In this document: positions 52,548-55,500 of the stretch, piece after piece
Position numbering within the stretch: the first letter of the stretch is position 1
Layout: every line of letters begins with the position of its first letter
Source: Camelus dromedarius
Taxonomy: Eukaryota
Length of the DNA stretch: 64,000 nucleotides
Assembly (NCBI RefSeq): GCF_036321535.1
Contig: NC_087451.1
Coordinates: 42,842,001-42,906,000, forward strand
Direction of reading: 5' to 3'
Program-made: the position numbers and the translations under genes
The notes under the pieces: generated by a model
What the model saw: only the letters and a program-made list of their open reading frames with translations
Database searches by the model: none
Told to the model about the DNA's origin: nothing

Positions 52548-55500
52548 TCAGCAGCAGCTGTGGGGGAGCTGGGGTATCAGGTAGGTGTCCAGCTCCTGGC
52601 ACTGGTAGAGGGCTACGCTGTCCAATACCCACTCTCGGGTCACCACGGGCGCTTCACACATCTGCCCAATCACTGGGGACAGAGAACACAAACAGAGATT
52701 AGTGTCAGTTCATGTTTTCCCAGATCAGATTCTAGTCAATCTACTCCAGGGACCTAGTTGGATGAGTCCTTTTTTTTTTTTTTTTTCATTTTACAATGTT
52801 GTGTCAAATTCCAGTGTAGAGTACAATCTTTCAGTTATACGTGAACATATATATATTCATTGTCTGGATGAGTTCTTAAAATTACTCAGGTAGGAGCAAA
52901 ACTGTTGATCTTAAGCAATGCTTCAGGCCATAGAACCTTACTCAGAAGTCTGAAGACTGACTGCTGCTGAAAGCCTACAGCCTCTGGCAACTTTATTAAC
53001 ACAAGCTCCAATCTGTTAAAGGAAAAGTCACCAGAGAGCAAAACAGCATTGCAATTCAATGATGTGAAAATATGTTTGCAGTATCTTGAGTGAAAAAGCA
53101 AAACATACAATAACCATGATCACATTTGTGTAAGATATATGTGTGTACATATATACACACATACGCCTGGAAGAATTTTCTGGTAATCATCTCCAAATGG
53201 TGGGATTACTCGGATTATTTCATTATGGCTGTGCTCATTTATATTTAAGTGATGAATATTCATATTTAACATCTCCATGGAAAGAGTTCATGTACTACTT
53301 TTATAATGCAAAATAAAGAATAAAGTTTTAAAAGGACATTTTAGCCATTCATTCACTAATTCAGCAAATATTTTGGGGGGGGGATTAGGTTTATTTTATT
53401 TGTTTATTTTAACGGAGGTACCGGGGATTGAACACAGGACCTTGTGCATGCTAAGCATGTGCTCTACCACTGAGCTACACCCTCCCTCAACAAATTTATT
53501 GAGCACCTAGGAAGTGCTGAGAGCTGTGTTAATCAAGCACTGAGTAACCTGTGGTGAACCAAACTCATCCCGCCTCATACGACACAGGCCTTCTGAAGCC
53601 CCACATGGGAGCACCATCCACTCTAGCTGACCTAAACAGGACATTAAGACCTATGATCACCACAGTAATCTGCACACTTAACCTGGGCCCTCTACCAGAT
53701 ACTCTTCTGGATGAAGGCTTACAGCAAGACTCACCATGGAAGCCACTGTCCTCTGTCCAGGCGTCCGGCTGCACGACCACAATTGAATGAGTACCCTGAA
53801 TCCCCAGGAAGGAAACAGCATTGAGGGTATCAGAGCAGGACTTTTGGGACAGAAACTTCATTTCTTGATGGTTTACTGAAGAAGATTACTCTGGGGGCAA
53901 CCAGACAAAGGAGGGGCACGTGGCAAAAAGGAAGGGTTAGCGAGAAAGCCTTCCCTTAGTCTGTTAAATACTTGTAGCTCTCAAGTCCTTACTTATCCCT
54001 TACAGATGGAGTCTTCTGGAATGGGTGTGTGGTCAGAGAAGGGTCAGGGTGAAAAAAGGCTTCTGAGACTACACTGGGGTTCTCATAGGGACTGGTGGGT
54101 GCCACCCTGCTCAATCACAGGACAGAATATTATGTCCTCCCCCTCTGACAAGGCACCAAACACTTACCTCACTGCGGGTGAATGATGAGGGCTCCTTCAC
54201 CACAGAAGCCCCACAGAGGTGCACCATCCATTCTAGTTGATCTAAACAGGATATTCAGACCTAAAATAACCACAGTAATCTACACATTTTACCAGGTCCT
54301 CTACCCTCTACTCCTCTGGATGAAGTCTTACAGCAAGACTTCTTAATGGGAGAGTCCTTGTCTCTCTGCTCCAAAGGGACAAAAAGGCCTCCAAATACAA
54401 TCTATTCTAGGGGTATGGATTTTAAGTCAATTTGCTACTAATAAGCTGCCTACTCTGGTTATCAGCCTCCATAAGGCCACTTGGTAGATAAGGTTTGATA
54501 GTCTCTCAAATGAAACACTTGGCGAGAAAAAAAAATCTAAGATCTAATTTCCATTAATTTGCTAAATTGCTGGCTAAGATACTGCAAAAAAATACCCACC
54601 CGCCATCCCTCCTTCCCCGCCTAATTTTGTGTTGGTAATTGATAATCACAGCCACTGAGAGCACCATACTCGGTGGTAATTACTGTAAATGTCAAGAGAC
54701 GGGAAGATAAGTTATTCAGTCAAAAAAAAAAAAAAAAAAAGACAAGTCATCCTGGACAGAGACTCAGCATATCAGCGGGGAAAGGCTATATGTTGGACTG
54801 GAATCAAATCACTTGGGGGAAGAAAAATTAGAAGAGATTGTAGAAATGTTCCACTTGCACCTGGAAAACCAGCAGAACTGACCACTGGGTTGCTGCTGGG
54901 CCCTTTTGGGTGCTCTTTTCCATCAGCCCATTTCTGGGGATGGCTGAGGTGCTCCTGTTTGGCTGAGTGAACTGAGGTCAACTGACTCACCTCCAATATG
55001 ACACCAGCTAGAGATGCTGGTTTTCGTTATACCAAAGTACAAAAACACTGAGAAAGCTGAGTGGCACGTGGAAATTTCATAAAAATCCAATCAATAACCA
55101 ATAAAGAAGACAGAAGCAGCATTACTTTGCCAGGCTCACTTTCTGCCGCTCATCTGTCCCCGCCCAGATGCCAAGGCCATCTTCTGGGGAGAAAGAGGAC
55201 CTGATCCTTGGGCAGAGGTGGGCACAGAGGAGAAGGTGAGCAGCTTTTGTTTTGAAAAGAACAAACCAAATCTATACACACACACAGGGCCTCAGTGCCA
55301 TAGAACTCCAGAACTAAGCCCCACAGCAGTCCTAAACATTACATCACATTCAATGTCAAATTTAATTAGAAGATGTTCATCAAGAGTCTTCCCCTGCTCT
55401 GGGCCTATGTGGGGCCCCAGGCCCACAGGGCTTATGTAGCTGCTGTATTTTCGTCTCTGTATCAAATGAAGATGGTTTAGGAAGAGCAGAATTCTTTCTT

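What the first reader, a model, noticed from the sequence alone, without database searches (positions are those of the whole stretch)
53595..54340. BRCA1 carries a second copy of the exon-22 acceptor and first half of exon 22, placed right after exon 23
Seen: 53595-53731 aligns to 54205-54340 at about 84% (21 mismatches and 1 gap in 137 nt). The native copy is the last ~99 nt of intron 21 plus the first 37 nt of exon 22. The duplicate keeps the acceptor TCCTGTTTAG (AG at 53633-53632) only 103 nt from the exon-23 donor, which is a spliceable distance. Exons 21 and 23 both end in phase 1, so the pseudo-exon reads in frame as [13 protein letters not shown], against native [13 protein letters not shown]. 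Inference: an old, lineage-specific intragenic duplication inside the BRCT2-coding region. I do not recall it in human BRCA1 intron 23. The acceptor and reading frame have survived about 16% divergence, which could be chance over so short a stretch or could be selection.
Basis: partly seen in the sequence, partly recalled or inferred. Interest (0 to 1): 0.8.

Follow-up and report, generated by a model that had tools for sequence, protein, structure and literature searches.

The report
Ancient BRCA1 exon-22 fragment copy
The second copy of the exon-22 acceptor in BRCA1 intron 23 is real, but it is an old insertion shared by bats, carnivores, horses, whales, ruminants and camelids that drifts like ordinary intron, so it is a decaying relic rather than a camelid novelty or a selected exon.

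Summary
On the minus strand, 53731-53595 is a 137-nt copy (21 mismatches, 1 gap) of 54340-54205, which is the last 99 nt of intron 21 plus the first 37 nt of exon 22. The copy starts at +4 of intron 23. More than 20 DNA runs of two coded organisms hold the stretch, so it is not an assembly artefact.

I fetched BRCA1 genomic loci from nine other mammals. The same insert, with the same boundaries, is present in alpaca, killer whale, musk deer, zebra, lynx and flying fox. The site is cleanly empty in elephant, ground squirrel and desman. This points to one insertion on the stem of Scrotifera, not in camelids.

The exon-derived part of the copy changes as fast as the flanking intron (0.68 vs 0.55 changes per site). 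That is three times faster than real exon 22 (0.22, p=0.005). The acceptor AG is lost in musk deer and lynx. Lynx also has an in-frame stop and musk deer a frameshift.

All 15 annotated camelid BRCA1 isoforms join exon 23 directly to exon 24. Two predicted cetacean isoforms use other cryptic sites inside the copy.

The RNA-seq junction test could not be run. Interest is low.

The parts
54205..54340 (-). Source (native) segment: last 99 nt of BRCA1 intron 21 plus first 37 nt of exon 22
53595..53731 (-). 137-nt duplicate, starting at +4 of intron 23 and ending abruptly in mid exon-22-like sequence
   Evidence: Orthologous inserts in six other Scrotifera:
55843..55897 (-). BRCA1 exon 21 (55 nt)
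54168..54241 (-). BRCA1 exon 22 (74 nt)
53735..53795 (-). BRCA1 exon 23 (61 nt). Its donor is ATG|GTGAGT, and positions +4 to +6 (AGT) are the first three bases of the alignable duplicate
52548..52672 (-). BRCA1 exon 24 coding part, including the stop codon
53632..53633 (-). Copied exon-22 acceptor AG. Rough PWM score 4.4, against 3.3 for the native exon-22 acceptor
   Evidence: 31 of 244 AGs in 52700-56000 score as high or higher
53651..53652 (-). Upstream AG inside the duplicate (first exon-like base 53650, PWM 2.55). Its cetacean orthologue is the acceptor of the predicted gray-whale isoform X5
53721..53722 (-). Cryptic GT donor 12 nt after the exon-23 donor (GCT|GTAAGC, PWM 4.3). It is in frame, and its orthologue is used in the predicted vaquita isoform X6
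53507..53509 (-). First in-frame stop (TAG) if exon 23 is joined to 53631. The open frame is 41 codons

Best explanation
The feature is a relic of one small duplicative insertion. About 137 nt from the intron 21/exon 22 boundary of BRCA1 were copied, in the same orientation, into the first bases of intron 23. This happened in the common ancestor of Scrotifera (bats, carnivores, perissodactyls, cetartiodactyls) after the split from Eulipotyphla.

The junctions share a short AAG/AG microhomology. The original start of intron 23 is still recognisable right after the insert, as AGAAGG.. This fits a replication template switch or a templated insertion during end joining, and I infer one of these as the mechanism.

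Since then the copy has drifted as ordinary intron. The camelid copy still has its AG and an open frame only because decay is slow and the stretch is short. It lacks the second half of exon 22 and has no good donor of its own. It is not an exon of the annotated BRCA1 mRNAs.

Its lasting effects are two. It now supplies positions +4 to +6 of the exon-23 donor. It also places several weak cryptic splice sites next to exon 23.
For: Shown:
- The repeat is real and ends abruptly.
- An insert with the same boundaries, right after exon 23, is present in seven taxa of four orders. The site is cleanly empty (GTAAG[G/A]T..CTG..) in elephant, ground squirrel and desman.
- Parsimony changes per site on a six-lineage tree are 0.68 for the duplicate's exon-derived part, 0.22 for real exon 22 (p=0.0045) and 0.545 for the flanking intron (p=0.38). 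The duplicate's intron-derived part gives 0.44, against 0.57 and 0.545, not significant.
- The AG is lost in Moschus and Lynx, Lynx has an in-frame TAG, and Moschus has a 1-nt deletion.
- Candidate donors after the copied acceptor score at most 5.2, against 7.5-11.7 for the real BRCA1 donors scored (exons 19-23).
- All 15 camelid BRCA1 proteins in the 90% cluster (C. ferus, C. bactrianus, C. dromedarius, V. pacos; isoforms X1-X4) read ..SGFH|VIGQMCE...
- None of 160 fetched BRCA1 proteins has a second LEWM motif.
- A single origin of the duplicates is not rejected (p-AU 0.33). Camel A and A' do not group together, so there is no sign of recent gene conversion.

Inferred:
- The template-switch or templated-insertion mechanism.
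- The age. The JC distance between A and A' in camel is about 0.17. Over twice about 80 My this gives about 1.1e-9 per site per year, a plausible mammalian rate. The timescale is from my own knowledge.
Against:
- The intron-derived part of the copy is nominally slower (0.44 vs 0.55-0.57 changes per site), though not significantly.
- Two Gnomon-type predicted cetacean isoforms use sites inside the insert, so the copy is not wholly invisible to annotation pipelines and possibly not to the spliceosome.
- The dating rests on one eulipotyphlan (Galemys). No pangolin, suid, xenarthran or primate was examined.
Confidence: 0.85

Rival explanations
1. The copy is a functional, selected alternative exon in camelids. 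It would be either a cassette or an alternative terminal exon that replaces the exon-24 part of BRCT2 with a 41-residue tail ([13 protein letters not shown]...), ending at the TAG at 53509-53507, with the AATAAA at 53500 as the poly(A) signal.
For: The acceptor, polypyrimidine stretch and a branch-point-like CTTAAT are intact, and the PWM score is slightly above that of native exon 22. The frame is open for 41 codons and AATAAA lies 131 nt after the acceptor. RNA runs hold 0.3-0.67 of the words of this mostly intronic stretch. A gray-whale predicted isoform ends inside the orthologous insert.
Against: The exon-like part evolves at the intronic rate, and the AG and the frame are lost in other lineages. 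The AATAAA block is conserved in elephant and desman, which lack the insert, so it is not part of a duplicate-born exon. An open run of 41 codons has a chance probability of about (61/64)^41 = 0.14. No camelid isoform in the database uses it. The whale model uses a different AG and a different frame. Word shares in RNA contigs are equally well explained by unspliced pre-mRNA. From established knowledge of human BRCA1, loss of the exon-24-encoded end of BRCT2 destabilises the domain.
Confidence: 0.05
2. The insert is neutral as coding sequence but matters for splicing of exon 23. It created the consensus +4 to +6 AGT of the donor and brought G-rich runs within 60 nt of it. Its first ~100 nt would then be under weak constraint as an intronic splicing element. 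Its cryptic +12 donor and upstream AG would give low-level unproductive or variant isoforms across Scrotifera.
For: The donor is GTAAGT or GTGAGT in all seven insert-bearing taxa, against GTAAGG or GTAAGA in the three empty-site taxa. The intron-derived part is nominally slower (0.44 vs 0.55-0.57). The +12 donor GCT|GTAAGC is kept in five of the seven insert-bearing taxa examined, is slightly weaker in Moschus (TCT|GTAAGC) and is lost in Lynx. Vaquita X6 carries the matching 4-residue insertion and gray whale X5 the upstream-AG tail.
Against: The rate difference is not significant (p=0.23 and 0.32). Only one predicted model in each of two species was found, and only one protein in the database carries the upstream-AG tail. 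These are automatic predictions whose RNA support I could not inspect. Taxa without the insert splice exon 23 normally.
Confidence: 0.1
3. The duplicate is an assembly artefact or a recent camelid-only event.
For: None beyond the a priori possibility. The two copies lie only 610 nt apart.
Against: More than 20 DNA runs of two organisms from several studies hold 0.95-0.99 of the words. An independent alpaca assembly is colinear. Orthologous inserts occur in five further orders or suborders. The 16% divergence between copies is far too high for an assembly collapse or expansion.
Confidence: 0.005

Closest known systems
Intronic pseudo-exons or decoy splice sites born from partial intragenic (exon-boundary) duplication
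   Same: A copy of a real acceptor plus part of its exon sits in a nearby intron. It keeps splice-site-like motifs, is not part of the main mRNA, and drifts neutrally.
   Different: Most described pseudo-exons are known from disease-activating mutations in human genes. This one is a roughly 80-My-old fixed insertion shared by a superordinal clade, and it abuts a real donor so closely that it now supplies +4 to +6 of that donor.
Tandem exon duplication giving mutually exclusive or cassette exons (Kondrashov and Koonin type)
   Same: The new exon-like sequence arose from a local same-strand duplication within a gene, in a phase-compatible position. Exons 21 and 23 both end in phase 1.
   Different: Only the first half of the exon was copied. 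There is no copied donor, no purifying selection and no transcript support in camelids.
Rare genomic changes (indels, retroposon insertions) used as clade markers in Laurasiatheria
   Same: The character is presence or absence with a clean empty site in the outgroups. Its distribution matches Scrotifera to the exclusion of Eulipotyphla.
   Different: It is a local duplicative insertion, not a retroposon. Taxon sampling here is ten species, with only one eulipotyphlan.
Naturally occurring minor BRCA1 splice isoforms using tandem or cryptic sites (as catalogued for human BRCA1)
   Same: The +12 donor and the upstream AG inside the insert are used in predicted cetacean isoforms. These resemble minor in-frame or truncating events.
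   Different: These sites exist only in insert-bearing mammals, and the evidence is two automatic gene models rather than measured transcripts.

Membership tests
Real intragenic duplicate (not chance, not artefact) | Significant gapped similarity with defined ends | tested here: met
   137 nt, 84% identity, local score 162. No extension beyond the ends.
Real intragenic duplicate (not chance, not artefact) | Present in independent DNA data | tested here: met
   0.95-0.99 of words in more than 20 DNA runs. Alpaca assembly colinear.
Camelid lineage-specific insertion | Absent at the orthologous site of non-camelid mammals | tested here: not met
   Present in Orcinus, Moschus, Equus, Lynx and Pteropus.
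Scrotifera-stem insertion (rare genomic change) | Same boundaries in all ingroup orders sampled, and an intact empty site in the outgroups | tested here: met
   Empty in Loxodonta, Urocitellus and Galemys. Only one eulipotyphlan was sampled, and no pangolin, suid, xenarthran or primate.
Functional alternative or cassette exon | Purifying selection on the exon-like sequence and its splice sites | tested here: not met
   0.68 changes per site against 0.22 in real exon 22 and 0.545 in the flank. The AG is lost twice, with one stop and one frameshift.
Functional alternative or cassette exon | A usable donor or poly(A) site of its own | tested here: inconclusive
   The best donors score 5.2 and 4.6 on a rough PWM, against 7.5-11.7 for the real ones scored. 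AATAAA at 53500 exists but predates the insert.
Functional alternative or cassette exon | Transcript evidence (junction reads or annotated isoforms) | tested here: inconclusive
   None of the 15 camelid isoforms uses it. The read-level test could not be run.
Tandem exon duplication (mutually exclusive exons) | Whole exon copied with both splice sites and the same length | tested here: not met
   Only 37 of 74 exon nucleotides were copied, and no homology follows.

The most novel reading that the evidence does not exclude
In insert-bearing mammals, camelids included, the 137-nt copy may act as a regulated source of BRCT2-altering BRCA1 isoforms. These would be a +12-nt in-frame extension of exon 23, or exon 23 joined to an acceptor in the copy giving a truncated BRCT2 tail. 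That would be a clade-specific layer of BRCA1 regulation absent from human and mouse.
Probability: 0.06. Interest if true: 0.5.

Novelty: new member of a known kind. Interest (0 to 1): 0.2.

Why it matters
The practical value is mostly in setting expectations.

- **Annotation and splice prediction.** Anyone annotating or scoring BRCA1 splice sites in dog, cat, horse, cattle, whales, bats or camels will meet a near-perfect second exon-22 acceptor and a tandem +12 donor beside exon 23. They should know these are an old shared relic, not a lineage novelty.
- **Phylogenetic marker.** The insertion is a clean presence/absence character that groups bats with carnivores and ungulates and excludes a eulipotyphlan. 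This is a small independent marker for Scrotifera.
- **Exon birth and selection.** It gives no support for a new BRCA1 exon or for selection on the copy.

Tried and rejected
- **RNA-seq junction test.** No junction evidence exists either way.
- **Extending the duplicate past 53595.** There is no significant similarity beyond it, so I could not show a whole 610-nt tandem unit followed by a deletion.
- **Orthologue look-ups that failed.** The Phacochoerus X5 and Bos indicus X2 proteins are not on record. The Erinaceus gene range is too long for DNA to be returned.
- **Tree of native and duplicate copies.** It is essentially a star. A single origin is neither shown nor rejected by it (p-AU 0.33). 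The argument for one origin rests on the identical position and boundaries.
- **Database search for proteins with the gray-whale-type tail.** Only that one model carries it.
- **Spliced exon-23/pseudo-exon junction peptide search.** I did not run it. The joined string has no reference, and the length window of the search would have excluded most transcript fragments.
- **Literature.** Three searches found no description of this duplicate.
- **Splice-site scoring.** MaxEntScan and SpliceAI are not available. I used a rough position matrix from memory, for relative comparison only.

Full report
**1. Observation**

On the minus strand the window carries the 3' part of BRCA1. Probing with short BRCT peptides and reading the boundaries gives this exon map:

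| Exon | Window coordinates | Length |
|---|---|---|
| 18 | 62202-~62126 | – |
| 19 | 61635-61595 | 41 nt |
| 20 | 59406-59323 | 84 nt |
| 21 | 55897-55843 | 55 nt |
| 22 | 54241-54168 | 74 nt |
| 23 | 53795-53735 | 61 nt |
| 24 (coding part) | 52672-52548 | – |

- The repeat finder and a gapped local alignment pair 54340-54205 with 53731-53595. That is 136 vs 137 nt, one gap, 21 mismatches, about 84% identity.
- The native segment is 99 nt of intron 21 plus the first 37 nt of exon 22.
- The copy starts at +4 of intron 23 and stops abruptly. What follows the two copies is not similar (score 11, against 12.6 +/- 1.7 for shuffles).
- DNA runs of two coded organisms from several studies hold 0.95-0.99 of the sampled words. 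An independent alpaca assembly is colinear at 97.2% over 3.6 kb. The duplicate is real.

**2. How old and how widespread**

I used the 40-residue exon-24 peptide to reach full-length BRCA1 proteins. I then listed mammalian orthologues and fetched their genomic loci.

BLAST with the camel exons and both copies, plus MAFFT alignments of the start of intron 23 and of all copies, give the following.

- The same insert lies immediately after exon 23, with the same two boundaries, in Vicugna, Orcinus, Moschus, Equus, Lynx and Pteropus.
- In Loxodonta, Urocitellus and Galemys only the native copy exists. There intron 23 runs straight from GTAAG[G/A]T..CTG.. into the block that follows the insert in the other species.
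- The simplest reading is one insertion on the stem of Scrotifera, after the split from Eulipotyphla.
- This fits the divergence between the two camel copies. The JC distance is about 0.17, or about 1.1e-9 per site per year over twice about 80 My. The timescale is from my own knowledge.
- A maximum-likelihood tree of the 17 copies is a star. It neither proves nor rejects a single origin (p-AU 0.33). The positional identity is the real argument.
- Camel native and duplicate copies do not cluster together, so recent gene conversion is not indicated.

**3. Mechanism of origin (inferred)**

- At the 5' junction, the donor GTAAG and the bases before the native segment (..GAAG) share AAG.
- After the insert, all bearers have AGAAGG.. 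(Orcinus GGAAGG, Moschus AGCAGG). This aligns with the original GTAAGG.. start of the intron in the empty-site species.
- A short same-strand copy placed about 0.5 kb downstream with junctional microhomology fits a replication template switch or a templated insertion during end joining.
- A full 610-nt tandem duplication followed by deletion of the second half is possible but needs two events. I found no trace of it.

**4. Is it constrained?**

Fitch counts on a fixed six-lineage tree:

| Segment | Changes | Sites | Per site |
|---|---|---|---|
| Native intron-21 part | 57 | 100 | 0.57 |
| Duplicate, intron-derived part | 44 | 100 | 0.44 |
| Real exon-22 part | 8 | 37 | 0.22 |
| Duplicate, exon-derived part | 25 | 37 | 0.68 |
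| Intron 23 just 3' of the insert | 55 | 101 | 0.545 |

- The exon-derived part of the copy is significantly faster than the real exon (p=0.0045). It is indistinguishable from the flank (p=0.38).
- The intron-derived part is nominally slower, but not significantly (p=0.23 and 0.32).
- The acceptor AG is gone in Moschus (..TTTGT) and Lynx (..ATTTG). Lynx has an in-frame TAG and Moschus a 1-nt deletion. Equus and Pteropus change the conserved tryptophan.
- A 41-codon open run has a chance probability of about 0.14.
- Selection for the acceptor or the frame is therefore not supported.

**5. Is it spliced?**

- On a rough position matrix, the copied acceptor (4.4) is as good as the weak native exon-22 acceptor (3.3). 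However, 31 of 244 AGs in the neighbourhood score at least as high.
- Donors downstream of the copied acceptor score at most 5.2, against 7.5-11.7 for the real BRCA1 donors scored (exons 19-23).
- All 15 camelid BRCA1 proteins in the database cluster join exon 23 to exon 24. These are isoforms X1-X4 of three Camelus species and alpaca.
- None of the 160 BRCA1 proteins fetched has a second LEWM motif.
- Two automatic cetacean models do touch the insert.
  - Gray whale isoform X5 ends ..[25 protein letters not shown]. That is exactly exon 23 joined to an AG 19 nt upstream of the copied exon-22 acceptor, as read from the Orcinus locus.
  - Vaquita isoform X6 carries the in-frame 12-nt extension produced by a GTAAGC donor inside the insert.
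- Only the one whale protein carries that tail in the database.
- Both sites are intact in the camel: first exon base 53650 for the upstream AG, and last exon base 53723 for the +12 donor.
- RNA runs holding 0.3-0.67 of the words of this mostly intronic stretch are compatible with plain pre-mRNA.

**6. Side effects of the insert**

- In all bearers the exon-23 donor is GTAAGT or GTGAGT. Positions +4 to +6 are the first bases of the alignable duplicate; within them +4/+5 (AG) is junction microhomology shared with the original donor, and only +6 (T) is unambiguously new. The empty-site species have GTAAGG or GTAAGA.
- The AATAAA at 53500, which another first-stage note (s1-200407) links to a terminal-exon reading, lies in a block conserved in elephant and desman as well. 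It predates the insert.

**7. Verdict**

The feature is an ancient, clade-wide, neutrally decaying duplicate, a pseudo-exon-like relic. It is not camelid-specific and not maintained as an exon. I found no description of it in three literature searches. It is an ordinary kind of object.

It has minor value as a clean insertion marker for Scrotifera. It is also a caveat for BRCA1 splice-site annotation in domestic and wild laurasiatherians. Whether the cryptic sites are used at low level in camelids remains untested.

Noticed in passing
window 53413-53484 (-), with tail to about 53385: A tRNA-Ala-like SINE (ARAGORN calls tRNA-Ala, anticodon AGC) with an A-rich tail, inserted in intron 23 just after the conserved AATAAA block. 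It is shared with alpaca and absent at this point from the other eight mammals aligned, so it is a camelid-lineage insertion.
   Followed up: partly
window about 53590-53495 (-): The first ~100 nt of the original intron 23 (..TTCACCACAGGTTAC..GGTGCTCAATAAATATTTGT) are recognisably conserved from elephant and squirrel to camel. This includes the AATAAA at 53500, so the hexamer is older than the duplicate.
   Followed up: partly
L002:60838 (Orcinus), and proteins P0133 and P0141: Predicted gray-whale BRCA1 isoform X5 ends in a 22-residue tail encoded by the insert, read from an upstream AG. Predicted vaquita isoform X6 has a 4-residue in-frame insertion from a +12 donor in the insert. RNA support for these models was not checked.
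   Followed up: partly
L003:53520-53528 (Equus quagga): Exon 23 ends ..CCATA|GTAAGT instead of ..CCATG|GT. The last exon base is A, which gives a weaker donor on the rough matrix (7.2 vs about 10.4) and changes the first base of the codon that spans the exon 23/24 junction.
   Followed up: no
window 52312-52348: read laying refuses this stretch of the BRCA1 3' UTR because of a filter. Future read-laying should start above 52348.
   Followed up: no
L009 about 46830-46900 (Pteropus) and L005 (Lynx), same intron-23 position: Where most mammals have TGAATGAATGG.., Pteropus has expanded (TGGA)n/(GGCT)n microsatellites and Lynx has (ATGC)n-like repeats.
   Followed up: no
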